Assembly: GCA_037447605.1 (NCBI GenBank)
Contig: CM074807.1
Span: 1,364,001-1,428,000 of the forward strand
Source of the DNA: Zygnema circumcarinatum SAG 698-1b
Taxonomy: Eukaryota; Plantae; Zygnematophyceae
Length of the DNA: 64,000 bases
Reading direction: 5' to 3'
Shown here one piece after another: positions 3,161 through 60,800 of this stretch (position 1 is the stretch's first letter; each line of letters opens with the position of its first letter). The position numbers and the translations under genes were made by a program. A model generated the notes under the pieces. The model searched no databases. It saw only the letters and a list, made by a program, of their open reading frames with translations, and had not been told where the DNA came from.

Positions 3161-3904
3161 TAGGGATGGATTAGTTACGATTATATATTATATATTATAT
3201 TATACAACTGTGACGAATAGATAACGGCTGATATATATTAATTTACAACGCCTTTACAACATGTACGGTCGTACGGTCGTAAGACTGTACGGTATTATGC
3301 GGCCCGAGCACGAGCAGACACAGAAAACCAGACGAACGCATTTCGCAACGCCAACGCCAAAACGACCTAATTTTGGTATGGTACGACCATACGACCGTAC
3401 TCGTACGGTCATACGGTCATACGGTTGTTAATTGTTCAAAACGAGTGGGTATAATATATGTAATAAAGTGTTTTACTTTGTAATATATTACTAATTTTAA
3501 ACCCGTTGTAAATTATATAATATATTCGGAATTTATAACGCGGGTAGCACCAATTTGGTGCTACTGTACATCGTATCCATATTCTAGAAATGCAGTGGTC
3601 AATACGATACGATATTGCATTATGCGATACGATCAATCGATATTTCGATACGTTTGTGTGCATGTGAGAAATTGTATTTATCAAATGATAACGAAATGAC
3701 AGTTTTAGTTTTTTTTTTTTTTTTTTTCTGGAAAGCTTCAAAACTTTCAGAGGAAGAGGAGAGAGAAAGGGCGAGGGATATGGTATTTCTGAAGAGGATC
3801 TGAAGTCGGCGGAGGAGAGGAAGAAATATGGTGCAGTTTTTTTTCTCTCAATGATTGGGAGCGTGATGGGAGGCTGAAGAGGAGAGGAGAGGGCAGGGGA
3901 AGCC

Positions 3905-15558: not shown

Positions 15559-15932
15559 TTTGGCAAAAATCGGGCGAAACTATTGTTTTTGGCAAATATA
15601 AGGTCCGTGTTACCAATAGGCGAGCGGAATTATGTTAGAGTTCATGCATGTTCGTACGTATCATATCGTATCGTTTTCTGGAATATCGTACCGCATCGTA
15701 CCGTATCGTTTAAATTCGAGCGCGTAACGGCTACTACAGCTCATACGGCTAGTACCGTATCGGGGAGTTTCGTATCGTGTCGTATCGTATCGAAGCCAAT
15801 AACAAGGGGAGAGGAGTGAGCGCCTCTTACGGCGGCACGTGCGGGGAGATTAGGTGAGTTTTGCGTAAGCCCGTGACGGCTAGTACAGCTAGTACGAATT
15901 GTACGAATTGTACGAATTGTACGGGAAAGGGG

Positions 15933-22683: not shown

Positions 22684-22887
22684 ATGTAATATCGTATTGG
22701 TTATATCGAAATTATACCAATATCTTTGAGGAAATGACGCTACGACTAAAATATAATGGATACGTTACGATACGTTACGATGGTATCGTATTATCTGTAT
22801 CGAAGAAGAGGGCACGGAACGATACGATACGTTCCTCCTCCGGAACAGCCATGGCGCCGGAGCCCTCCTGCCGGAGGCGCCTTCGCC

Positions 22888-38304: not shown

Positions 38305-38922
38305 ATGGCGGCTGCAGCGCTCCTGTCGGCTTCTTCGGCGTGCGTGACGGGCTTGGCTGCCCCACAGAAGGTTGCAGGAGTCGCATCCAGCAGGGCGGCG
38401 GTCAGATTGAGTGGTTTGAGCCCCCTGAGGCTGAGGACGAGCTGCAGGAGCAGCAAGTTGGTGGTGAAGGCTGCTGTCGCAGAGTCTCAGGATGAGACTG
38501 CGCAGAACGTCGCTGCAAGGACCTTGGCTGGATCCCTGTTCGCGTTGTTGGCGAACACGGGCAGCGCTGCCGCAGCTCAGGAGGTAATGCAGCTTGCAGA
38601 TGTCGACTCCAGGCCACTCATCCTGCTTGTGGTCCTTGTGCCTGCCGTCGGATGGGTGCTCTTCAACATCCTTAAGCCCGCATTGAACCAGCTTAACAAG
38701 ATGCGCGGTGTCAAGTCTCTGGTTGCCGCTGCTGGTCTTGGAGCCGCCGCCTCTCTCCTGGCAGTACCTGAGGCAGACGCTGCACAAGAGATTGCCCAGA
38801 TTGCCGTTGACTCTCGCCCTCTCATCTTGCTAGTGGTTCTCCTGCCCGCCATAGGCTGGGTGCTCTTCAACATCCTTAAGCCCGCTTTGAATCAGCTTAA
38901 CAAGATGAGGGGCTTAAAGTAA
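38305..38922 (+). CDS. PSBY: Photosystem II PsbY polyprotein precursor (two PsbY units), intronless
   Basis: Transit peptide followed by two copies of DSRPLILLVVL.PA.GWVLFNILKPALNQLNKMR, each preceded by a hydrophobic thylakoid signal peptide ending A-x-A. Confidence 0.96.
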   Translation: MAAAALLSASSACVTGLAAPQKVAGVASSRAAVRLSGLSPLRLRTSCRSSKLVVKAAVAESQDETAQNVAARTLAGSLFALLANTGSAAAAQEVMQLADVDSRPLILLVVLVPAVGWVLFNILKPALNQLNKMRGVKSLVAAAGLGAAASLLAVPEADAAQEIAQIAVDSRPLILLVVLLPAIGWVLFNILKPALNQLNKMRGLK

Positions 38923-45468: not shown

Positions 45469-48400
45469 TCAATAATCGTTATCTTCTGGAACATACGGAT
45501 TAAAGAGAGTGGTGCAGGGGTCAGGGTCATGCCTCATGACGCGAGCTGCGCGTTGGAATTCATCCCTCAAAAAACGCATGGAATGGCGGTCCACCACTCT
45601 GCCAAGATCGTGGCTGATCTCAAAGGGGTCTTCGATGCAGAGCAAGTGGCGCTCATTTCCAATTCGTCGAGTCCAATCTTTCTGATCCTTGCTGCATGCA
45701 CCACAACAAAGCCGCCAACCACTATGTAGAATTTTAGGGTTTCTAACTCCTGAAAGATGTTCATGCTTGCAGCTGCTCCAACCTGCTGGAGTGAAGATTC
45801 CATTCCTTTCCTGTACAGCCTACTTCCACGAGCATCTGAAGGGGGAGAAGAAGAGGCAAAGTGCAAGTGGAAAGTGGGGTGTATACCTGATATAGCCTCC
45901 AGTTCGAACGCTAACAACTGAGCGATTGTAGTCGTGCCGGAAACCCCAGTACTCGAAAAACCCTGTCAGAATCTCCCCCACAGTCTCGTGATTGGAAGCT
46001 CCAAAATCACGCAGGGTCTCCACTCGGTCGAAATAAGCGCAGACGATGTCTCCAATACGCACACGGTATGTAGGCTCCATGCTCTGTTCAACATCACATC
46101 CATCAGGTAACATCATATAGCATTCACTAATGCAGAAACAATCGTTTCGTTCAAGATGAACCCGGCATTTCCCACTCTGCCTATTTCTGTTGTCATCTAT
46201 CCTTTTTCAGCATCATTTAACTCCCTATAGCCGTTGGCAAATTCTAATCCGCCAATATATAATCAAAGTGATCAGCAAAGATAATGCGTTATAGAGATTC
46301 GGCAGGGCAGTTGCTACTGCACTTTCCTGACACTAAGCGAAAGACGGATAAAAACAATAATCCAATTTTACAGAGCGGCTCATACCTGCAGGCATGGTAA
46401 GATAGGCGGGCGCCGCTGCTGCAGATAATGAATGCACATCATCACATACCTGCATAAGGCACCACCCATCACCCATCTCATCATCTAAGCCCCTACAGTT
46501 GACACTACAAAAATCCATTCTTCACTCAGCATCATGCCTCCTTGCTGTACTCTCATGGCAAATGTAGCCTTTCCCAGGGATAAAGTAGTCGATATGTAAT
46601 GTGATAACGAGAAAGAAAAAAGCGTATAAGTAGTGGTCATTGACTCTGAACCAAAGCTTTTGGGACATACGCATAAGATGACAATGTCCCTCGGTAGGTC
46701 TCGTTGACTTGGCGCCTTTTGGCCCAGTGCTTCACTAAGAAGGCCAACTGCCGCAGCCGCTCATCCACTTGAGCATAGTCGCGAAGCAGCTTCGTGTTGG
46801 CCACTGCCAGCATGTTGTTCACGCAAATGTCGCATGCAACTTCCGTCTCCGAATCCACAAACTTCACTATTGGAACTCTAGCGTGCGTCAGTGCCTGTTT
46901 CCGGGCTCATGGGAGAGAAACAGGTAATGAAAAGTTAAAAGCCTACCTAACAGGAAGGCTGATCCACCTCACAGAAAGAGGCAACCAAAGACCATACAAC
47001 AACCAAGTCTTCTCAAAGCATACAACAGAATATTTCAAGGATCAAATAATACCTGTACTTGGCGCATCCCCTCTGCGTTCAAAATGGCTGCCATCCGGCT
47101 TATCAGCTCCGGCTTGGAGGCATTCGAATCATCCACAGCAAGACACACATCAATGTCGCTATTGCGAACGCCGAATGCGTTCGCACAGGATCCGTAAAGA
47201 AACAATTTTGCATCTGCCCAATTGCGTGCTAAAATGTTATCCAAACGCTGGAGAAATGTGCGCCTTCGAAACTCCTCCTGCGGGGTGGGGATGAGACTCT
47301 CAAAGGTGGCGAGCAGGCGAGCTGTGATCTGCATCATGTCCAGTCGATACCGCCCCTCTTGGCGCGGCTGCAGAGCAGAGCTCGGATGAGACAAAGGGAG
47401 GGGTCGGTTGCCCTCCTCCCTCTGCCTCCCCTGCCTGTTTCGATAATTCTGCTCAGCACCCTGCAGCTCCATGCCCTACTGTCAGACTCTGTCCATCATC
47501 ATTATGTTCGACAGTCAGACCGGAGTAGCTGCTAAGGCATACACCGAGCATCAAAAGGAGCATCTTTCATGGAAAGCAAAACAGAGTCCAGAATGGTTCT
47601 GTTAGTGCTAACTACAGCCAACAAAAGAAGAATGGGATATTAAAAGAAGCCGCACATAAGCTAGCCCAAGACGTTTCGATGCATAACCAACACACAAGCC
47701 GTAGGATAAACTACGATAATCAATAACAAACATAGTTACAACAAAACAAAGGCCAGATGGTCCATGTTTACAATATATCTTTGCCAGCACTCATAGTCCA
47801 CAGTTCGAGAAACTCGAGTAATTACAGGCGGCAGCATAGCAATTTTTGCCCTATAGGCCCTCGTGACTTCTATCTTACCTGGAGCTGTTGATTTCTTCCC
47901 ACTGTGCTTGTCCCTTGACCTAGGTCAACTTGCTCTCCTCCCACATCATGCTGGTCTATAGCCTGCTGCATCTCTACTGCCATGTCAAGAGCATCCGGCA
48001 ACTCCGGGTATAGCTGCTGTCCTCGGACCCCATCAGTCCCAAAACCTTCAACGGTGCTTCCGATACTTCCACTTGACTGATTTTCTATGCTTGAAGTGCC
48101 ACTACTCAATTGCAGCTGCGTCTTCGGAAGCTCCTCTGTCTCTAGTTTAGCATCCGCCGCCTCTGCAGATGTATCGTCTACAAGCTCACGAAAGCTGAGC
48201 TGATTCCATCCTCCCCTTAGACTGGCGCCTTCAGCTTCTCCTTCTATTTGGTCCTGCCCCTTCTCCAACTCTGACTCAACCTTCACCTCTGGGTCTGTGT
48301 TACTTGCATTACCTCCTTCCATTCTACCGTTCCGGTTCCTCTCACCACTGTTCCCACCACCATTTTCAATATGCACTATTCCACCATCGCCAAGCTGATC

Positions 48401-51205
48401 GGCTCTCTTCCTCATGTCCGTTTCACTATCCTCATCCGTTGCATCCCTTTGGACAGCATGGTCTCCTGACTCATTTCTTGCGTTGGCCTCCGAAGTTTGC
48501 CGCTTCGCCTCCAGGATGGCATCTCCTCGTTCCCCATCGGTAACAGCAACCATTGCAGAAGGCAGCCCTGGATGATCGAGCTGTGCTACCAGAGGAACCA
48601 CCCCAGGAGCTGCTCCCGCATGACTAAAGTGGCCTCCAACTCCATTCTCCACGTGGCGCTCACTCCCTGAAGAATTTTCTGCCCTCTGAATTTCTCCCTC
48701 CAGCCCAGTACCATCTTGCATCTGGCCTTGATCTGAAGGCTGCTTCAATCGCCATTCTTGGACAGTGTTTTTGCGCCTCCGTGGCTCCTCCCTGCTGTCG
48801 TAACTGCGTCCTTTCATCAGCTCTGCTTCTTCTCCTTTCAGCGCCCAATCCTCCCTCCCCTTCCCATCCTCTCGCTTTCCTCTTCCAGAAATTGGCCGGC
48901 CATCCCGTCCTCGCCCGTGCCCTTGTTCCTCGCCCCAGTTTCGGCCATGCACAGCATCTTCACTTCTCAGAAAACCACCCCCCCTGTCCAGTCCTTCCAC
49001 GATTTCAAATCTGCTTCCTTCCCAATCTGCAGTTCCACGCTGACCATAAGGCCCACCATAATCCTCTTCCCGCAGCCCCTCGTCCTTACCTATTCCCGGC
49101 CATGCCCCCCCGGTCCTCGCCCCTCTACGTCCGCCCTCTCCCCTGCCTGCACGTCGACCCCCAACTCTCCCTCCGTCAATCACCATTCCCTGCCTGCCAT
49201 CTCTGCCATACCTGCCTACGTCCGATCCTAAGATATCTCCTGGTTCAAACATGCGGCCCTCTTCATCACGCATGTCAAAAGCAGCCATTGCTTGGAAGTT
49301 TGCGTCGTGAAGCATTCCCATTCCACGACCAGGAGGAGTTCCAACCGGACTCCGGTGAGGGCTGCGATGTGGGCTCCTTTGTGGGCTGCGATGCGGCACT
49401 GCCATTGGCCCGCGCTCCCCACCTGGCCGTATAGGGCCATACATAACTCCACCACCTCTGGCTCCATTATCAGCCCACCCATGCCGCATACCCCCTCCAG
49501 GCCCTTCTGGAAAGTCCATGCTATCTGGAAAGAACTCCTCAGGATGGAAATTGGGGCCATATGGTGCAGCATGAGGTGAAAGAGGCTCTGGGTTTGGCGG
49601 AAAAGTGAAGGAGGGGTCAAACGGTGGGCGAGGCATGGGACCTCCCCTTGCACCAGCAAAAGGAGGAGGAGACATGTATGCAGGCGGCATCGGTGGCTCT
49701 CCAAAAAAGTCATGTGGCCCTCTAAAGGCAGGGCCCTGGGGCGAACCAGAAGCATGAAAAGGAGCTGCCCTGGGTGATCCTGATGGCGCAAACCCTCCCC
49801 CTCTTGGAGAGCCTGGAGGATAACCTCGTGCTCGTGGACTCCTGACTGGCCCATTTGGATGAGGAGGACTCGGGCAGCCAAATGGACCTCGAGGACTGTT
49901 CGGATTTGGAGGACCTACAGGGCCTGGGCCCCATATCCTTCCCATGAATTCTCCGTTCTCATCGACGCCAGGTGGCAGGTCTACATCCTTGGGCATTCGA
50001 TTGTGAAGGTTGATACGACTCGGAGATCCTCCACCACCATGTAGAAGGTGTGGACTTGTTCGATCCTGGGGCCCTTGCAGCATCCTAAGGGGAGGCATGG
50101 GCTGTCCGTGATCCATGCCAGCGAAGAAATCTTCAGGCATTCGGCGCACCTCCCGGGAGGGATCAGGAACCGGCCCGTGAGGGAAGCGGTTCATGGCGGA
50201 AGGGGGTGATGGGCTAGGACGCCTGCCCTGCAATAAGCGCAGAAGCTCCTGCCCATTGTGATAAGGATCAGGGCCTGCATGTGAGGGGTTGTGATGATGC
50301 TGCTCTGGCGGCCACATGCCTTGAAGTGAAGGGTGCATCGTGGGCGGAGGGCGAGGCTGGCCAAGCAGAGGGAACTGCTGCTGCTGGTGCTCCTCCATAT
50401 GCTGTTCATAAAGCAGCCTTTGTTGAGCCTGCTGCTGATGCTGCAACCGTTCGAAATGCTCTGCCTGTAGCTGCCTCTTTAACATCAACGCATCACGTGA
50501 GCGTGGGGATAGCGGAGGCTGTGCCGGAGGAGTATTATGGCGGTCGAGGCCAGAAGGAACAGCAGAGTTTGGATGTAATTCTTCCTTCACCTTATCCGGC
50601 AGACCGAGACGAACTGGCGGCAGCTTTAGGTCCGCCGCCTCTGAAGATGGAGGTCCAAGGTTGTCAAACCATGCAGTAAAGGATGGAGCAAGGGAGGGCT
50701 TAGATGGCTTCCAGTCAGCATTCTGCTGAGAAGAATGAAAGTTATTGAGTTTTGCAGGAATGCTGAAAGGAGAAGGCCACAAGTTCGAGCTATTGGATGA
50801 CGCCAACGGGGGCACCAAGGGATTCATCCCCGTCTGCATGGCTTGCTCAGCAGGGCCGGGAGTGGACGACGGCACTGCAAGAGGCGGCGTGGCAGTGGGA
50901 GACCTTCCCGAACCAATGGCTGACATTACGGCTCTTCCTTGGCCGCCATGGCCATCAGCAAAAAGCCTGGGTTGGAATTCAGGGCCAGACAGGGAGGTCG
51001 ACATGTCGCGGAAAGACGTTTCCCGCTGCATCTGCATGCTCGCCTGCGCGAGGGAATTTTGAACGGAGGCGCCATGGCTTGAGGAGCCTTCCTTCAGACT
51101 GAGCAGACGCAATAGCGCCAATCCCCCTTCCGTATACCCGTCCACATCCAGCCCATCCTCCGCCTGCTGCTGCTGTACCTGCGCCTCTCCAGCAGGTTTC
51201 TCCAT
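45469..51205 (-). CDS. URT1: UTP:RNA uridylyltransferase 1 (TUTase), 6 coding exons, very long disordered N-terminus
   Basis: [20 protein letters not shown]; [15 protein letters not shown]; [27 protein letters not shown]; FFEYW..HDY..VSVRTG; [40 protein letters not shown]-stop. The N-terminus carries the URT1-type QLDHPG motif. Confidence 0.93.
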
Positions 51206-51299
51206 CAAAACCTGAGCGCCCCCTCTAAGAGGGGAGCCAGGTAAAGAACCCTAGATACGTCCACTCAGAATCTCAATGCATCTTTCCAGACTTGTCACG

Positions 51300-51435: not shown

Positions 51436-52735
51436 GGCGTGTGCGAGCAGGACGCCGTGGCGCGGGTTCGTGCGCCACGTGGCGGACGGCGCACGCTCCT
51501 CGGCCCCCGGGCCGCCTCGGTGCGCGGCGAGCGGGGGGGGCCGCCAACCGCCTGCCGCCCGCCGGCCGTCAATCGGCCGCGGGCGCGCCACCCCCCGTCC
51601 ATCGGACGGCCGAGGGAGGGAGGGAGGGAGGGGGGCCGGCCTGGAACGAGGGCTGGGATGGGATGGGATGGGAGGGGAAACCGTCCGTACAAGAGACGTT
51701 TTTAGAGTTTTGGGTTTCAGTATTAGAACGTTCTAATATCCGATAGTTTCAGAGTTTTAGAACACTTTTAGAACGGCCGTATGGCCGTTGACATTGAACA
51801 GCATGTACGGTCGTACGGTTGTCGACCTGAATTTTAGGGTAGGTTTCGGCGTTGCGATTCTTGCGAATGGCGCTGGCCGGTCAACGTACGAACGTACGAC
51901 AGTACAATTATACGGTCATTCTTAAAGTGTTTTATAAACCGGCCTGCCTTTTAGAGTCTTTGACCTGGAATTTTAATACACGACGCTGCGTTCTAAATAA
52001 TACCCATCCCCGCCCGGAACTTGAGGGGAGGGGAGAGGTTGGCGACTGGCGAGGGTGGCACGGAGGCAGCCCTCGTCCGCCGTACATCCTATGGATCCGT
52101 GCATCCTATACATCCGTACATCCTATGTACCCGTACATCCTACGGCCCACAGGAGGGTGGAGGCCATGGCCGCAGGCGCTCCTCGTGGGTCCTTTGTGAG
52201 CGATTCGCCGTGGTCGTACAATGTGGGTTTGTCCCTTGTTTTATGTGTCGATGTGGCATTTGATGGCCTCGCCACCGCGAGTTGAATGCCAAATCATTTC
52301 CTCACACAACCAGTTGGGCCAGTTTGAATTTTTTCAGGAACAACAGACAAAGTAGTAGACTCGTCTCATTGCAGAAGGGCGATATTGAACGTTATGTACT
52401 GCACGGCACTGGACTACCAAATCGTCCAAAACCTGAAATTCCTTGCTTGCAAAATTGCATGCACCTGCATTGGTCGACGTGAATTGGTCGACAGTAATAG
52501 AACTGACTGACCGACTGACTCACCACTCGAAAATGGGCCGAGGGGCTCCAAGGGGCTCTTTGGCTAGCGAACATTCTATACAGAAAGCCCCAAACCTCAA
52601 AAAGTGTCGCTGGGTCACCCATCTTCATACTGTTACTCTTCCATGTACAAACTTTACAAGCACATCCGTGAAGGTTGAACTCTGGTAGATACTCCTTGAA
52701 GGAAGACCAGATACACCTTCTCTGACAGGCGGCCG

Positions 52736-55283
52736 TTAGCTTTCTGGCAGGTCCGCAACTTCCTCTTCCTTGGCAAGCGGCTGAATCCCTCCTGTCAAAA
52801 AGAGGATACGCGATTGAACAGCCGCTTTCCCTTTGCTTCGCCGCAGCTTGGCGACTCGATCAAGAAACTTCTTCTTTCCACTCTTGCAGTACTTTTCCAA
52901 CACTGCATCTTCTTCAGGTCTCCAGAAGGTTCCGATCTCCGTCACATCCGCTGACACATCATATATTTTCAATCAGACTAACATTCCTATCCTGTTTGAG
53001 GAAGGGATACATCCCTCCTTTTGCGCAGTCAGGTCAAAACTAAAGCATAGACGAGCTTTAAAATTAACAAGGCTCAAACGCAAGGTATTACCAGACACAG
53101 GCCAAAGAGTATTTCCTTACCATCAGGTCTTTCCAGAAGCCTTTTTGCTGCAACGAAGCTTCCTCCTGAAGCTGCAAGGGCCTTCAGAACCTCCACCTCC
53201 GTAGCGCAACTCTAAAGACCCAAAACCAGGGGAGACCTATTAAGGGCAGGAACACTCGCAGGGAGGGACTTCTTCTCTCTCCATGATTGGCTGATACATA
53301 TGCATATTACCTTTTTTTAACAGTTGCACGAATCGAGCCACAAAAGCATGGAATCCCAATCACAATTCCCTTCTTTCCCTATGCTCCAACTGATCACACT
53401 CACCAGCTCTTGCAGGTTCCTGACTCCTCGTCGAATCTGGTCAATCCTTTCCTTCTCTTCCTCTGTCAAAACAGCTTCCTGGCCACTTTCCTGAACTCCT
53501 TCTCTCACATCTCCCTCCTCCGCCACGTCCCCATCCGTCCCCTCACCTCCATCATTCCGCATTCGCGGCCTCTTTTTTTTTTGGCTTTCTTCTTGACCTG
53601 CTGCTTCTTCCTCCGTTCCGCGAACCCGGACCTCGGCCATGCTGTCTGATTCTCTTCCTTCGTCAAAATCGAAAAAATGTACACTCCTTGGACGATCCCC
53701 TCTAATCTCTTCGGATGCCGGAGCTGCAGGAGCTGTTTTGAACCCTTCAGCTTCCGGTTGCGTATGAACATCCCCATTTCCACCCGGGGCTCCTTCTTTT
53801 AACCCCTCTCTGTCCTGTTTTTGGATTTCAGACTGTGAATCATGGCGGGCTTCTGCTTGTATTGTCATCAACGCTGCGGCTGTTTCTCGCACTGAAAGAC
53901 TCTCCTCTTGCTCTTTTCTCCGCTTTTTGCGTGGTGTGTCAGTGAGCGCATCACTCATACTATCCACCTTCGTTTTATCAGGCAGCGCTGAATTATCCGC
54001 AGCTACCTTGCCAGTCCCTGCATCACATTCAGCAAGGGGTCCGGCCAATATGACGCTGTTCTTGAAGCAGGGACAGATATAGCAAAGAAGCAAAAAAACT
54101 ATCCAGCTTAGAAACTGTAAGCGCTTGCTTAATTTCATTCACATCCAGGGCAGTTTCAGCGCGCCTTACCAGTGATCCTCTGAGTATCACGAGGTGCAAT
54201 ATCAGGAGTTTCAGGAATAACTATAACAGAATTTTTAGGCTTTGATCGGTCCTCCTCTTGCTCCACACGGTTGACTGGTGGACCCATAAGCGGAGGTTTC
54301 GCGCATTGGATGGATAGTCCTTTTTCCCGCGGTGAAGTAACTTGAACCTCCGGAATTTCAGCTGCCTCAGATTCTTCGGCTTTAACTCTAGGTAAAATGT
54401 GATGAATGTAGCGGTTTTTTAGCGACTGCCACGTATGGCCACAACCAGTCCATTCAATTTCCACTTTGTGCCACAGCTTCTCGCCCTTCACAGACATTGT
54501 GCTTTCATGTTTGTGAACAAGTCCGCGCAATGTGCGATCATCTTCCTCCGTGAAATACTTATGCTCCCGCTTTTTAGTTTCAAGAGCCTTTATTATGTAT
54601 GGTTCAAGTGGCACCAGCTTCTTCTCCGCGACACAATTGTCCACATAACTTGTAAGGTAAAGCACCTAAAAAAAAAAAACAACAAACAGACAGAGACCGA
54701 GAACTGCTCGCTTATAAGTGCCTTCCTACTCTCACATAAAAATCTCGATGAAAATCCAGCTTATAATTTACATATCATTTTCGAATAGTCTAAAAAATCC
54801 ATTATCTATAGTTTCCCCTCTCGTTTGAAGCCATAATTTCGACTGAAAGTGGCCGGTTCTAATAAAACCAAAAAAATTGGAAAAACTAAAACAGAAACAA
54901 ATTCAAAGCGTTTCTTTCATGCTTTCATTGATCCTGCGACCATCTCCTATTAAAAAGGACCGCCTTTACCTTACACAGATATACGGCCGATGCAAAATAA
55001 AATCGCAGCAAGCACACACCTGGTCCGGCCGCAGCTGTCTCAGAAATATATCCCTGTCCTTCTCCCGCACGAGCTCAAGCAGGCCTTGCTCTCCTCTCGC
55101 AGCCGCGGGAGACACCCACTTCCCGCCGTGCTTCTCCACCAGCGAGCGGATGCGAAAGCGCTCCGCAGGATAGGTCGGGTCCGTGGAGACGCTGCGCATA
55201 AAGAAGCAAATGCCTGACCCGTCTTCTCTTCGAAACAGCCTCTCCTCCGCCCCCTCCGCGCCATCCCCCCCCTCCTCCGCCAT
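52736..55283 (-). CDS. RAP1: RAP1/TERF2IP-like telomere protein (BRCT - Myb - acidic linker - RCT), 5 exons
   Basis: Exons 55283-55020, 54665-54170, 54017-~53404, ~53211-53121 and ~52951-52736, all GT-AG and phase-compatible. BRCT: LFRREDGSGICFF..LVEKHGG..TSYVDNCVAEKKLVPLEPY. Myb: FTEEDD..VKGEKLW..HTWQSLKNRYIHHI. RCT-like: EVLKALAASGGSFVAAKRLL..FWRPEEDAVL..KGKAAVQSRILFL. Confidence 0.85.
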
Positions 55284-55610
55284 GGCCCTTCCCTCCCTCT
55301 CTCCCGGAAGGCCCAGCCCTTTGGAGCACAGCAACTCGGCGTTCCCCTTTCATATCGCTTCAGATCTCGATATATCATATCGTACAAAACTATTCAATAC
55401 GAATCCCGTATCGTATCGTCTCGTATCGTATTGTATAAAATGGTATAATATCGTATCGATTTTACTGTACTATCGTATCGGTTGCGTGCTACATGCCACA
55501 TGCAGGTAAAGCGCTGTAGAACAAGAACCGTAACTGGCCGCATAGAAAATATTTTTCTGCTTAAACGGTGTCCTGGAGCAGCCATAGTAAAATTCTTGGC
55601 AAGGGCAGCC

Positions 55611-57397
55611 ATGGCGGCAGTGCTCCGCCTGCAGTTGCCGCGGCCTGCCTTACACGGTCATCATGGCGGTCGTGCTCTTCTGGACGATAGCAGAAGTTGT
55701 CGAGTCGGTTTTTCTCTGAGCTGCGTGCAGGAATGCGGGAAAGGGAGCTCAAGAGCGAGCAGTTTGAGAGTGCAGCACGGTGGGAGGTTTGAAAGACTTC
55801 CGAGGCCTCTGCAGGTGTATGACCCGCAGGCGCGTGTTGATTTTCCCCTTCGAGACGAAGATTTGGAAGGTCAGTGAACCTACTGTGCTGGCCTGCAATG
55901 GTTCGTCTTGCATACTATCGCGCCTTGTATTGCACCTTCATGGAGCTCCTTAACATTTTCCTTCTAGGGAGTTTTCACTTCACTTCTCACATTGGTCTCT
56001 TTGTGTCATGTGACCTTAACGGGGGACTCCACTGGTGGACTCCATTACTGATTGAGGACTTGGGAGTTGGCATTGGGATTTTGTCCTTTTCAGTTTGCAC
56101 ATTCTCGTATGCTCTTGTAAGCATGTTTTTTTGAGCTGACCGATGGCTTCTGCTCCCTGCAGGCCGACGTTTGCTGATACTGGCTCCTCCTGACTTGCAG
56201 CTGACTCAGAAATTATTCCGAGTCCGCCTCCAACTGGTGGCCGCCTTGAAATCATTGTAGACAAGGAAGCCATCAAACGGGTGGATTTAACAGCAGCACA
56301 TGATGTGCTACGCCCCTACGTCTCTCAAGTTGGTGAGTCTTTTGGCTTGGCATAAGGTTAACACGGTGGAGGAGTGTTCAAGACTTAGAACTAGTGCTGC
56401 GTTTACGTGCTCTTCAAGTTGAATAACGGCTTTCAACAAGGTTGAGCACTCGTCCATCGAGAGTTCTCCGATGTTGCTTTCCTCCTATAGACGCCTGACA
56501 GATTAAAGGTTTGCTCACATAAGTGAAACTAAATCCTTTAGTTGGAGAGCAACAAGTCTCCTACTTCGTCGGGAGACCTCTTTATTCAGCTGCCCTTCGC
56601 TCAACACTTGCTGATGATGCTGCAGGAGATAATGTGGGCGAATCACGGAAGGACCCTCGGGAACTCATGGAACGCTCGGTTGGCTTTACCATTAACTATG
56701 AGCGCGAGGACCCTCTGGATCCACGCGAACTTTCTGAATTATCAGATGTCCGGATATGGTTCGTGAGGCTGGACGATGCCTATCCATGGCTTCCAGCTGT
56801 ACTTGACTGGAGAGGAGGAGAGCTTGCGCGGTACACTGCCATGCTTGTCCCACATCAGGTACATGCCAAGTCTCACAGCAACCTATTCCTGCCTTCGCTG
56901 TTGTTTGTCTAAAGGGATCAGTGTCCTTTTGTGGGTTCTCAAATATACTGACATCTCCTGCAAATATGATCGGACCTTGCGTGGCTCATTCACACTTTCC
57001 GATAGTTGTGTTTGTTTCAGTGTGCTTTTTGTATAATGTTGTTCTAGGTTGCCTTGGCACCAGTTTCACACAGTGCGATTTTGAATGCAAGTGCCTTGGC
57101 TCGTTTGGTTCAAGTGAAAGCACTTTGTCATCTTTGTTTAAGTGGTAATGCTAAGGAGACATGGAAATGCTTTGGTTTCGTGCTGGTAAACAGATGACTC
57201 GACGCACAGGACTTGTTTTCAATCCAGAGGCCCTGGAGATCTTCTCGCTACGAAAATACTTTACGGTTTATGAATGGATGCGAGCACGAGGACTCCCAAG
57301 ACCTGACTCTCGAGTGAAGGACATGATGAAAGTGCTCGGGTTTTCCATTGACGATGCCCTCTATACCATCATGGAGCAGTCTCCGCCGCCCGCTTAG
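55611..57397 (+). CDS. CRR6: CHLORORESPIRATORY REDUCTION 6 (NDH assembly factor, DUF1817), 4 exons
   Basis: Transit peptide; SVGFTINYEREDPLDPRELSELSDVRIWFVRLDDAYPWLPAVLDWRGGELARYTAMLVPHQ|MTRRTGLVFNPEALEIF. Confidence 0.94.
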
Positions 57398-57866
57398 ACA
57401 TATTCACGTTCTCACATGGCGTCCCACCAGCCCTTAGGACTCTCCTTAACCGAACTGTACAAATGGATGGAGCTGGGCTGCAAGCTAAGCTGGGCCTTCA
57501 AGCCTAGTCCGCCACAGATACTTTTTAAATTCTTGGTTAGTGTAAGAATCGGTTAGAATGGAGGTCCTTTGTCTTCCTCTTTCTTAGTTCATTCCATGTA
57601 TCAAAAGGGCCTTAGACAGAGTACCAGAACAATTTCAGAGTTCGTATTGCTCGGATCCGCGGCTGTTCCTCTTAACAGGCTGTTCAGAGAGCGACATATG
57701 AATGGACCAACCATCCAAAACGCTACCAATAAAAAAACCAAAGGGTCCACCGACCAATTGCTGTCCTACAAGCATGTACGAGCATGCGCCTACTGAGGTT
57801 CCCAGACAGACTGAATGGGTGTCTAACTGATGAACCGCTGAAAGTGATATGGAAGGGCACATGTGC

Positions 57867-60800
57867 CTACGGAAGTGCCCATTGGCGGATGCAGACGTCG
57901 TCCCCCACAGAGAGCAACGCCTCCTTGTCTTTGAAGGCAACACATGTCACGCCGCCCGGATGCGCGCGCTTGATGGTGAGCCTCGCAGAGGGCGGCTTGG
58001 AGACGTCCCACACAATGACGGAGGTGTCCAAGGAGCCTGTGGCCACCCTCGTGCTGTCGGGGGACCACGCCAGGCAGCTCACCCGAGCTGTGTGGTACAG
58101 CATGTTTTTCACCTTCGCCTGCACAGAGGGGAAGGGACTCCGTTCAAACATGCTGAAGGGTTGCCACAGTCATGGGGATGAATGGGCTGGGCCATGTGAA
58201 GATCAGGATGATAGGAAGACAGCCCAGAACTATCTCTTCTCTGGGAATTGATTGGCCATGGGGAATTAAGCTTCCTCAAAGAGCACAAGAAATAACGGCT
58301 TTCTCCCTATGATAACCTTGCTAGTAAGACAAGAAGGCCCCAGCATCTTTTAGATCACAGACAAAGCAGACACGCAAACAAAGCAGACCTGATAAACAGA
58401 GAAAACTTAAGACAAAGCCAAAGACGACACGACAAAGCCTCAGACAACACGACAAAGCCTCACCTCTCTGCTGATGCTATCCCAGATAACAACTTCTGGT
58501 TTTTCGTCTCCAGATGCCACCATGGACCCATCAGGCGAGTATGCCAGAGTAGTAATAGCTGCTCGATGCCGCTCCAATTCGACTTCCTTGGATATGGTAT
58601 CGCCTCTGACAGCATACACATGAAGCTTGCCGTTGGAGGATCCTACGATGGCTTCCTTTCCGTCAGGGGATATGCCGACTGCTGTTGCTTGAAAGCCCAG
58701 TGGCGTGGTGGAAAGCAACGTGTTCCCCTCCAATAGAGCGAGGCCCTTCTCTGTGATACATATCACGACCTTGGGGTTGTTGGTGGCCACAGAGATGTCC
58801 TTGGGCTGTGAGCCCACATCTGTCATTCCATCGCTGCTATACTGCTCAGCTGGAAGTTGCATTTTTCGCACCTGGCCCATAGCCCACGCTCCTCCACAAG
58901 CATTAGGGTTTGCTTCGTTCAGCTTCCTTTTTCCCAGGACCCAAAGGTTCATCACAGCGAGCAATGCCTAACAGCAGTGTGAACCGTCTCCATGAGGGAA
59001 AGTCATGCAATGGTACTCTGAGCAAAACGCACACCTAAGTCGCAAAGCAAACAGCCAAATTCAGGCAACAATAGTGTACCGTGTCATCAAATGAACAGGT
59101 TATAAGATGATCATCTCCGAGAGCCATTTTTCGGATAGAGTTGCCCTGCCCTGTGCCCTGAAGCCTTCCAAGAGACCCTTGTCCAACCCTCCAGCGAACA
59201 AGTGCTCCATCATAACTGCTGGTGTACAGTTCCACTTCCCCTTCAGGACCATGGAACACCTGCATGGCGTTAATGAACTTGTTGTGGCCATGAAGGATAC
59301 GAGAAGGCAATCGAGGGTCAGATAAAGACAGATAGTTGATGTCTCCAGACAGGGAAATGGTCACAATGTGTTTTGGTAGCCAGAGACATCCCACCTGCAC
59401 CAAACCAGCGCACTCCCAAGAAACTGGAAAGACTTAGCTTTCAGAACAAAAAAAAAAACAACCCATACAAAAAAAACTCATACAAAGACAACCCCAACCC
59501 AACCCTTTACCGTTTCTCAAGTTAATCCAAGCTCCAAGCTGGCAACGATGTAGTTTAAGGATGGCTTAGCTAGGAACGGATGTTGGTTTTCTTGCCAGCA
59601 TGGAAGGGACTTGCGCTTACACCCTTTCACTTTCCCAAAAGAAAAGCGGACGGACTTTCCAAACTTACTTGCATATGCTCCACACCTGGTTGCTCCGCAA
59701 AAGTAAAAGTGGTGTTTACAGTGCCCGTGCCCTCCTCTGATATGTCCCAGATTTTGGCTGTCTTGTCTGCAGATACTGTGATCAACTGCCAACAACAGAA
59801 AACTTGTTAGTCGAACATACAATGTGAAGTCTTCAGGGCAAAAAAAGCCATAAAAAATGCCTTGTTCTAGGGGCAACATTGAAGAGATCAGACTCTGCAA
59901 ATCCGAGTTATAGGAGGAGGCACCAACCGCCAGGGGGCAGCTATACAGGAAAGGCTCAGCCGACCTGCTTCCCATCGGGACTCCAGCAGACAGCGTAAAC
60001 GCTCCCTGAATGACCATCCTCAGATGAAAGTTCGCCCATCTTGCTGCCCGACTTGCCCTCATAAAGAACGCACTTCTTGTCCGAGCTTACAGATATAAAC
60101 TTGCTGCCATCTGGCGAGTAGCGTATACAGTGGACATAGTTTGAGTGCTCCCTGCTCAAAGCAACCGGAACATGTGAGTGAATGTTTTGGGTTTGCTTAT
60201 AGGCGGATCAGTCACCAGTTCTAACAACAAGAGAGGGCAGATCAATGCATCCGTACGATATGTCGAAGTGGGTCAAAGACAAGATGCACGTGCAAAAACG
60301 ACAAATGCAAGTTCACAAAATCTGGGGAGAGTGAAAGGGGTCTGAGTGCTTGAGTCAAGCAAAACGAAGACAGAGGCAGAGTATTGGATAAGTGGTGAAC
60401 AGGGTTTGTCACGTAGAAAGGCACGGTCTGTGTCCCCTAGATTTGGAAGTATTTTCCGACTGTCGAGAAAGCCAAGTAATCTAAAGAGTAAAGCGATACC
60501 ACTACTAAGCTCCTATAATTCCTAATTTCCAGATTATAATGGATCCAGCATCCACTATAGGGAGATGATTGATGATCAGACATGCTTCGAAGTTTGGCAG
60601 GGCTATGATCTCTGGACGGATACTCGGGTCCGCTTATTAGAACATGGAAGAGTGGTGCAAACATGAGACAGAAAAGAGTAGCAACCGCGTGTACCTGTTC
60701 GAATGTGAAAACCGAAATGGTGGCCCTTGATAGAAATTGACGAGATTATCCTCTCCACAAGTGACCATGCGAAATGGGCGGACTGGGCGCAGACTGCAGC

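What the first reader, a model, noticed from the sequence alone, without database searches (positions are those of the whole stretch)
52736..55283. A full-architecture RAP1 (shelterin TERF2IP) homologue in a green-plant genome
Seen in sequence: five phase-compatible GT-AG exons encode, in order, a BRCT-like domain, a Myb domain, a long acidic linker and a C-terminal helical domain. From recalled knowledge of human RAP1, the motifs align in the same order: LFRREDGSGICFF vs LFVRDDGSSMSFY; SYVDNCV..LVPLEPY vs QYILDCV..LELEAY; FTEEDD..VKGEKLW..HTWQSLKNRY vs FTDADD..VTGNALW..HSWQSLKDRY; W..EED..L..G...V..RI.F in the RCT. RAP1 is known from animals, fungi and trypanosomes but is generally reported as not found in flowering plants. 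Inference: this lineage retains an ancestral shelterin component later lost in land plants, implying an undescribed TRF-like/RAP1 telomere complex. The neighbour 327 bp away is the plant-specific CRR6, which argues against contamination. The ORF track splits this gene into four uninformative pieces.
Basis: partly seen in the sequence, partly recalled or inferred. Interest (0 to 1): 0.9.

Follow-up and report, generated by a model that had tools for sequence, protein, structure and literature searches.

The report
Telomere protein RAP1 in streptophyte alga
A green alga closely related to land plants has an intact, expressed gene for RAP1, a chromosome-end protein known from animals, fungi and trypanosomes but listed as missing in Arabidopsis, so plant ancestors probably had it and it can now be tested at algal telomeres.

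Summary
Five minus-strand GT-AG exons (55283-52736, 559 aa) are in frame, and all four junctions appear in transcript-like contigs from four studies. Exon 2 passes the Pfam Myb_Rap1 cut-off (46.7 vs 27.1 bits), and its best PDB match is human RAP1 Myb. BRCT and RCT are split across exons and weak on their own. The closest relative (P0002, from a probable Zygnema transcriptome) matches all five exons in order and passes the BRCT_2, Myb_Rap1 and Rap1_C cut-offs. Its predicted domains match human RAP1 structures best (3K6G Z 11.9; 8RD4). Homologues from Mesotaenium and two unidentified transcriptomes join the gene in one clade, apart from animals and fungi. Host genes place the window in a streptophyte alga, probably Zygnematophyceae. 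This is a real, probably vertically inherited RAP1 with one Myb domain. No paper I could search reports RAP1 in green plants, though unnamed homologues are already in databases. Loss in land plants is likely but only weakly tested. Telomere location and partners are inferred, not shown. I found no earlier scan note on RAP1 in this genome. The joined protein was not searched (operator rule).

The parts
55020..55283 (-). Exon 1: ATG, short Gly/Glu N-terminus and the first ~70% of the RAP1-type BRCT domain
   Evidence: junction; 41% identity to P0002 residues 9-81, E 6e-19; non-green BRCT profile 11.1 bits, 1 of 300 shuffles as high
54170..54665 (-). Exon 2: last strand and helix of BRCT, basic arm (KKR), single RAP1-type Myb domain, start of linker
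   Evidence: Pfam Myb_Rap1 46.7 bits, cut-off 27.1; best PDB hit 1FEX human RAP1 Myb, E 3e-5; BRCT tail 11.7 bits, 0 of 300 shuffles
53404..54017 (-). Exon 3: poorly conserved charged linker with basic clusters (possible NLS; inference) ending in RCT helix 1
   Evidence: its last ~30 residues match P0002 402-432 and P0011 256-277
53121..53211 (-). Exon 4: RCT helices 2-3 (UBA-like bundle, the partner-binding half; Leu at the human F336 position)
   Evidence: non-green RCT profile 12.1 bits, 0 of 300 shuffles; 43-46% identity to P0002 and P0011; alignment
52736..52950 (-). Exon 5: C-terminal half of RCT (W..EED..L...RI.F) and stop codon
   Evidence: Pfam Rap1_C 16.4 bits over model positions 47-83; 45% identity to P0002 468-527, E 2e-16
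52314..52735 (-). 3' UTR, as far as transcript contigs reach (52314-52363 in four runs)
   Evidence: table 8
55284..55610 (.). 327-bp interval between the RAP1 and CRR6 start codons (shared divergent promoter region), with a degenerate (CGTAT)10 array at 55407-55458
55611..57397 (+). Neighbour CRR6 (plastid NDH assembly factor), spliced; used as a host marker, not functionally linked
   Evidence: Pfam Crr6; junctions

Best explanation
This is the alga's own, vertically inherited RAP1 (TERF2IP) orthologue, with the vertebrate-like layout of one BRCT, one Myb and one RCT domain. Shown here: gene structure, splicing, the three domains in order, and a separate algal clade. Inferred from how RAP1 works elsewhere: it is a nuclear telomere adaptor. 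The RCT helix bundle docks onto a helical motif in a double-strand telomere-repeat-binding Myb protein (a TRFL7/TRF2-like or other telobox factor), which places it on chromosome ends. There the BRCT and Myb domains restrain end-joining and recombination, possibly by contacting Ku as human RAP1 does. A side role in gene regulation at internal telomere-like repeats is plausible.
For: Myb_Rap1 above cut-off on exon 2; human RAP1 Myb is the best PDB hit. P0002 matches all five exons in order and passes BRCT_2 (34.7/27.3), Myb_Rap1 (48.2/27.1) and Rap1_C (37.2/24.2) without any alignment. P0002's RCT model (pLDDT 91, six helices) matches 3K6G best: Z 11.9, rmsd 2.5, 92 aligned, next hit Z 7.0. Its BRCT+Myb model matches 8RD4 and 7OZ0 best. 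Profiles built without algal sequences find exons 1, 2, 4 and 5 above shuffles. Algal clade support is 98/94 and 98/98. P0002 and the best RMD5 hit come from the same run. Hydrophobic residues are kept at the human I318 and F336 positions, as Val and Leu (their role in TRF2 binding is from my own knowledge). K39 is Arg in all five algal-clade sequences. BRCT-Myb-RCT is the defining RAP1 layout (PMC10813129). TRFL7, a proposed TRF2 orthologue, is reported in Klebsormidium and Chloropicon (10.64898/2026.01.29.702503). DNA-PKcs is reported in Mesotaenium and Klebsormidium (PMC10419180).
Against: No functional data. The human Ku-binding patch is only partly kept: K39 to Arg, but R40 to Phe and R55 to Ser. 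R133 is not in register; His sits there and a KR pair lies two residues upstream (residues from PMC12221994). The TRF2 RAP1-binding motif is not conserved even in fish and invertebrates (PMC8653790), so the partner may bind differently. The structure models used alignments that included known RAP1s, so they are partly circular, and they are of P0002, not of the window's protein.
Confidence: 0.62

Rival explanations
1. The gene is a true RAP1 orthologue but binds telomeric or promoter DNA directly through its basic Myb domain and arm (budding-yeast or trypanosome style), or acts mainly as a non-telomeric transcription or chromatin factor, while plant-type TRB proteins do the end protection.
For: The Myb region is net basic (+5; +5 to +9 in three relatives), and a KR arm is kept in all five algal-clade sequences. 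RAP1s differ in how they reach telomeres (PMC10813129). Earlier scan notes describe many internal TTAGGG arrays in this genome (unchecked).
Against: Only one Myb domain, whereas yeast DNA-binding RAP1s use two. Fish RAP1 Myb regions are similarly basic (+3, +6), and the Mesotaenium one is neutral (-1). The RCT partner surface is conserved.
Confidence: 0.3
2. The gene came into these algae by an old horizontal transfer from a fungus, animal or protist, so it says nothing about ancestral plant shelterin.
For: Patchy detection: no named Klebsormidium, Chara or chlorophyte hit among the proteins looked up. The deep branches of the trees are unresolved.
Against: The algal sequences form their own long-stemmed clade, not nested in fungi or animals. 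RAP1 in trypanosomes already implies an origin near the base of eukaryotes. The patchiness fits the limited sensitivity of a 105-aa single-sequence query.
Confidence: 0.05
3. Contamination, or a chance Myb plus BRCT protein unrelated to RAP1.
For: BRCT and RCT do not reach Pfam cut-offs on single exons.
Against: Spliced transcripts in four studies; plastid-function neighbours CRR6 and PsbY; a relative in the same algal sample as the best RMD5 hit; RAP1-specific best hits for all three domains.
Confidence: 0.02

Closest known systems
Human/vertebrate RAP1 (TERF2IP), shelterin subunit
   Same: BRCT - single Myb - long linker - six-helix RCT, in this order; best sequence and structure matches (1FEX, 8RD4, 7OZ0, 3K6G); hydrophobic I318 and F336 positions kept; K39 kept as Arg.
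   Different: Low overall identity (P0002 is 26-30% identical to a fish RAP1 over the domains); 559 vs 399 aa; a 7-residue insertion in the first BRCT loop; an insertion of about 8 residues before RCT helix 5; R40 and R55 not kept; R133 arm shifted; no partner shown.
Fungal Rap1 (S. pombe Rap1, S. cerevisiae Rap1)
   Same: BRCT, Myb and RCT domains; the RCT fold matches 3CZ6/3OWT/4BJ5 at lower scores (Z 6.5).
   Different: Yeast Rap1s have a second Myb-like domain (S. cerevisiae binds DNA directly); this protein has one Myb domain.
Trypanosoma brucei RAP1
   Same: A RAP1 outside opisthokonts with BRCT, Myb and RCT (PMC10813129).
   Different: TbRAP1 adds Myb-like, RRM and DB modules; none was detected here. 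It was not compared directly.
Plant TRB / TRFL telobox proteins
   Same: Myb-containing telomere proteins of the green lineage; candidate partners.
   Different: Telobox Myb rather than Rap1-type Myb; no BRCT or RCT; a different family.

Membership tests
RAP1/TERF2IP | Central Rap1-type Myb domain (PF08914) | tested here: met
   46.7 bits vs cut-off 27.1 on exon 2; best PDB hit 1FEX
RAP1/TERF2IP | N-terminal BRCT domain (PF16589 type) | tested here: met
   Split over exons 1-2, so below the Pfam cut-off alone; both halves found by a non-green RAP1 BRCT profile above shuffles; P0002 passes the cut-off and exon 1 is 41% identical to it; model matches 7OZ0 and 8RD4
RAP1/TERF2IP | C-terminal six-helix RCT domain (PF11626) | tested here: met
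   Exon 5 partial hit 16.4 bits; exons 4 and 5 above all shuffles; P0002 37.2 vs 24.2; model Z 11.9 to 3K6G
RAP1/TERF2IP | Order BRCT-Myb-linker-RCT on one transcript | tested here: met
   Frame check; all four junctions present, one contig across the gene
RAP1/TERF2IP | Telomere localisation / binding of a TRF-type partner through RCT | not testable with these tools
   Needs experiments; hydrophobic partner-surface positions are conserved
Mammalian RAP1 (Ku/DNA-PK-inhibiting type) | Basic patch K39/R40/R55 and Myb arm R133 | tested here: inconclusive
   K39 is Arg, R41 is Arg, R40 and R55 not kept; R133 position is His with KR two residues upstream; R40 also varies in fish (P0102)
Budding-yeast-type DNA-binding Rap1 | Tandem Myb + Myb-like (PF09197) domains | tested here: not met
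   Only one Myb domain in the exons and in P0002/P0011/P0055

The most novel reading that the evidence does not exclude
[quoted passage not shown] In it, RAP1 blocks Ku/DNA-PK end-joining at telomeres. RAP1 was lost at or near the origin of land plants, as TRB proteins and Ku-capped blunt ends took over end protection.
Probability: 0.3. Interest if true: 0.85.

Novelty: new member of a known kind. Interest (0 to 1): 0.62.

Why it matters
Whether plants have, or once had, an animal-like shelterin is an open question. A 2024 review tabulates RAP1 as absent in Arabidopsis (PMC11577926), and a 2026 preprint has just proposed TRFL7 as a plant TRF2 orthologue present in green algae. An intact RAP1 in streptophyte algae, including the Zygnematophyceae (sister group of land plants), supplies the missing partner. 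It extends RAP1 to another eukaryotic supergroup and makes a specific test possible: does algal RAP1 bind algal TRFL7/TRB and Ku? It would also date a loss of a shelterin subunit to around the move of plants onto land. The protein itself is an ordinary RAP1; the interest is in where it occurs.

Tried and rejected
Word-index homologue searches with P0002 and with an algal alignment returned only the query; they are uninformative at about 40% identity, not evidence of absence. PDB sequence searches with exon 1 or exon 5 alone gave nothing significant, and BLASTP of exon 1 against a fish BRCT failed; these pieces are recognisable only through P0002 or profiles. ESM Atlas searches gave only fungal and animal RAP1 clusters; clusters under 50 members are not searched, so this says nothing about plants. 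Alternative exon-3 acceptors at 54060 and 54055 would shift the frame and are not used. The UBA hit on exon 4 was rejected as a separate domain: the first three RCT helices are UBA-like. Attempts to tie SRR81289xx or ERR126841xx to a named organism through papers did not give a direct link. Literature searches found no report of RAP1 in algae or plants; subscription papers are not covered. Chen et al. 2011 (RCT residues) was not held.

Full report
Observation. The gene lies on the minus strand between 55283 (ATG) and 52736 (stop). Five exons of 264, 496, 614, 91 and 215 nt are separated by GT-AG introns of 354, 152, 192 and 170 nt in phases 0, 1, 0, 1. No exon has an internal stop, and the total is 559 codons plus stop. 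Contigs from four runs of four separate studies skip exactly these four introns, and a 1963-nt contig lies across the gene from exon 1 into a 3' UTR that reaches about 52314-52363. The run types are not on record, but the spliced contigs behave as RNA.

Domain identity. Exon 2 hits Pfam Myb_Rap1 at 46.7 bits (cut-off 27.1), far above generic Myb (15.5). Exon 5 hits the second half of Rap1_C at 16.4 bits. The best PDB match of exon 2 is human RAP1 Myb (1FEX, E 3e-5). BRCT and RCT are cut by introns, so I tested them in two ways. First, profiles built without algal sequences (named animal and fungal RAP1s plus some unnamed non-algal ones) found the two BRCT halves in exons 1 and 2 and the two RCT halves in exons 4 and 5, in model order, with 0-1 of 300 shuffles reaching those scores. 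Second, an exhaustive HMMER search with exon 2 returned P0002 (527 aa), which matches all five exons in order: exon 1 41%, exon 2 38%, end of exon 3 45%, exon 4 43%, exon 5 45%. P0002 on its own passes the Pfam cut-offs for BRCT_2, Myb_Rap1 and Rap1_C. AlphaFold models of P0002's domains are confident (pLDDT 91 and 94). The RCT model's top structural match is human RAP1-RCT 3K6G (Z 11.9, rmsd 2.5 A, 92 residues; next hit Z 7.0). The BRCT+Myb model's top matches are human RAP1 in 8RD4 and 7OZ0, ahead of all other BRCT domains. These models used alignments containing known RAP1s, so they confirm rather than independently prove the assignment. BRCT-Myb-RCT is the shared layout of all known RAP1s (PMC10813129).

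Host and distribution. The neighbours are plant-type: CRR6 head to head at 327 bp, and PsbY. The single-exon RMD5 gene in the window is closest to a protein from run SRR8128904 (72%), then Mesotaenium (57%), Chara (50%) and land plants (46-56%). In a tree it falls outside the land-plant clade, with Mesotaenium and other algae. P0002 comes from the same run series, so the RAP1 gene and the housekeeping gene share a nearest relative, as expected for vertical inheritance. These runs may be the Svalbard Zygnema mat project (PRJNA498913: two layers x three replicates plus a reference); I could not verify this link. The host is a streptophyte alga, probably Zygnematophyceae (inference). Further homologues with the same three domains are Mesotaenium endlicherianum ME000167S01841 (P0055), an EukProt transcript (P0011), and P0099/P0151 from ERR12684111/ERR12684107; the hosts of the last two are unknown. 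These group with exon 2 at 98/94 support, and in a BRCT+Myb+RCT tree they form their own clade at 98/98, not nested in fungi or animals. No named land-plant protein was seen among the hits looked up, and no other hit joined the clade. This is weak evidence for loss in land plants: the query was a single 105-aa piece, only about 30 of the 150 hits were named, and Klebsormidium and Chara orthologues were not seen either.

Mechanism. Shown: an expressed, single-Myb RAP1. Inferred: it works as the vertebrate and fission-yeast protein does, as an adaptor recruited through RCT to a double-strand telomere-binding Myb protein. The partner-facing positions I318 and F336 of human RCT are Val and Leu here (their role is from my own knowledge, as the paper was not held). 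The interaction is mediated by RCT helices 1-2, but the TRF2-side motif is poorly conserved outside tetrapods (PMC8653790), so the partner cannot be named from sequence. TRFL7, a proposed TRF2 orthologue found in Klebsormidium and Chloropicon (10.64898/2026.01.29.702503), is the obvious candidate. Human RAP1 blocks ligase IV by binding Ku through BRCT K39/R40/R55 and DNA through Myb R133 (PMC12221994). In the alga K39 is Arg in all five clade members, R40 and R55 are not kept, and the R133 position is His with a conserved KR pair two residues upstream. The Ku-blocking role is therefore possible but unproven; DNA-PKcs is reported in Mesotaenium and is lost only in angiosperms (PMC10419180). The main rival is direct DNA binding or a mainly transcriptional role; the Myb region is basic, but so are those of fish RAP1s.

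Novelty. This is a new member of a known family in a lineage where I found no report of it. A 2024 review lists RAP1 as absent in Arabidopsis (PMC11577926). Six full-text searches found no paper on algal or plant RAP1, with the caveat that subscription papers are not covered. Against higher novelty: homologues with automatic Pfam labels are already in public data, RAP1 is described as present in many unicellular organisms, and its presence in trypanosomes already implied great age. I found no earlier scan note on RAP1 in this genome. Interest 0.62: real, probably unreported, and it makes the question of an ancestral plant shelterin directly testable, but the protein is conventional and its function is untested.

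Noticed in passing
window 55407-55458 (also 3604-3612, 15666-15788, 22819-22827): A degenerate (CGTAT)n array lies in the 327-bp RAP1/CRR6 divergent promoter. TCGTATCGT occurs 7 times in the window against 0.16 expected; it may be a genome-wide promoter motif or a small repeat.
   Followed up: partly
window 54638-55046: Low-depth contigs cover RAP1 intron 1 in three of four runs: pre-mRNA or intron retention.
   Followed up: no
window 57191-57700: CRR6 transcript contigs run on into 3.2-4.6 kb contigs towards the convergent WD40 gene (57870-58964), suggesting overlapping 3' ends.
   Followed up: no
window 55020-55283: Exon 1 has GC3 0.76, against 0.40-0.54 in later exons: a steep 5' GC gradient.
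   Followed up: no
window 47870-51208 (-): A 1112-aa Pro/Gly-rich open frame with no Pfam hit, directly downstream of the RAP1 gene.
   Followed up: no
window 38305-38922 (+): Single-exon PsbY polyprotein with two PsbY units.
   Followed up: no
protein P0001 and similar hits: Unnamed Logan proteins with three to four Rap1-type Myb repeats; host unknown.
   Followed up: no
protein P0039: The Aldrovandia RAP1 model has a duplicated BRCT-Myb and no RCT, probably an assembly or annotation artefact.
   Followed up: no
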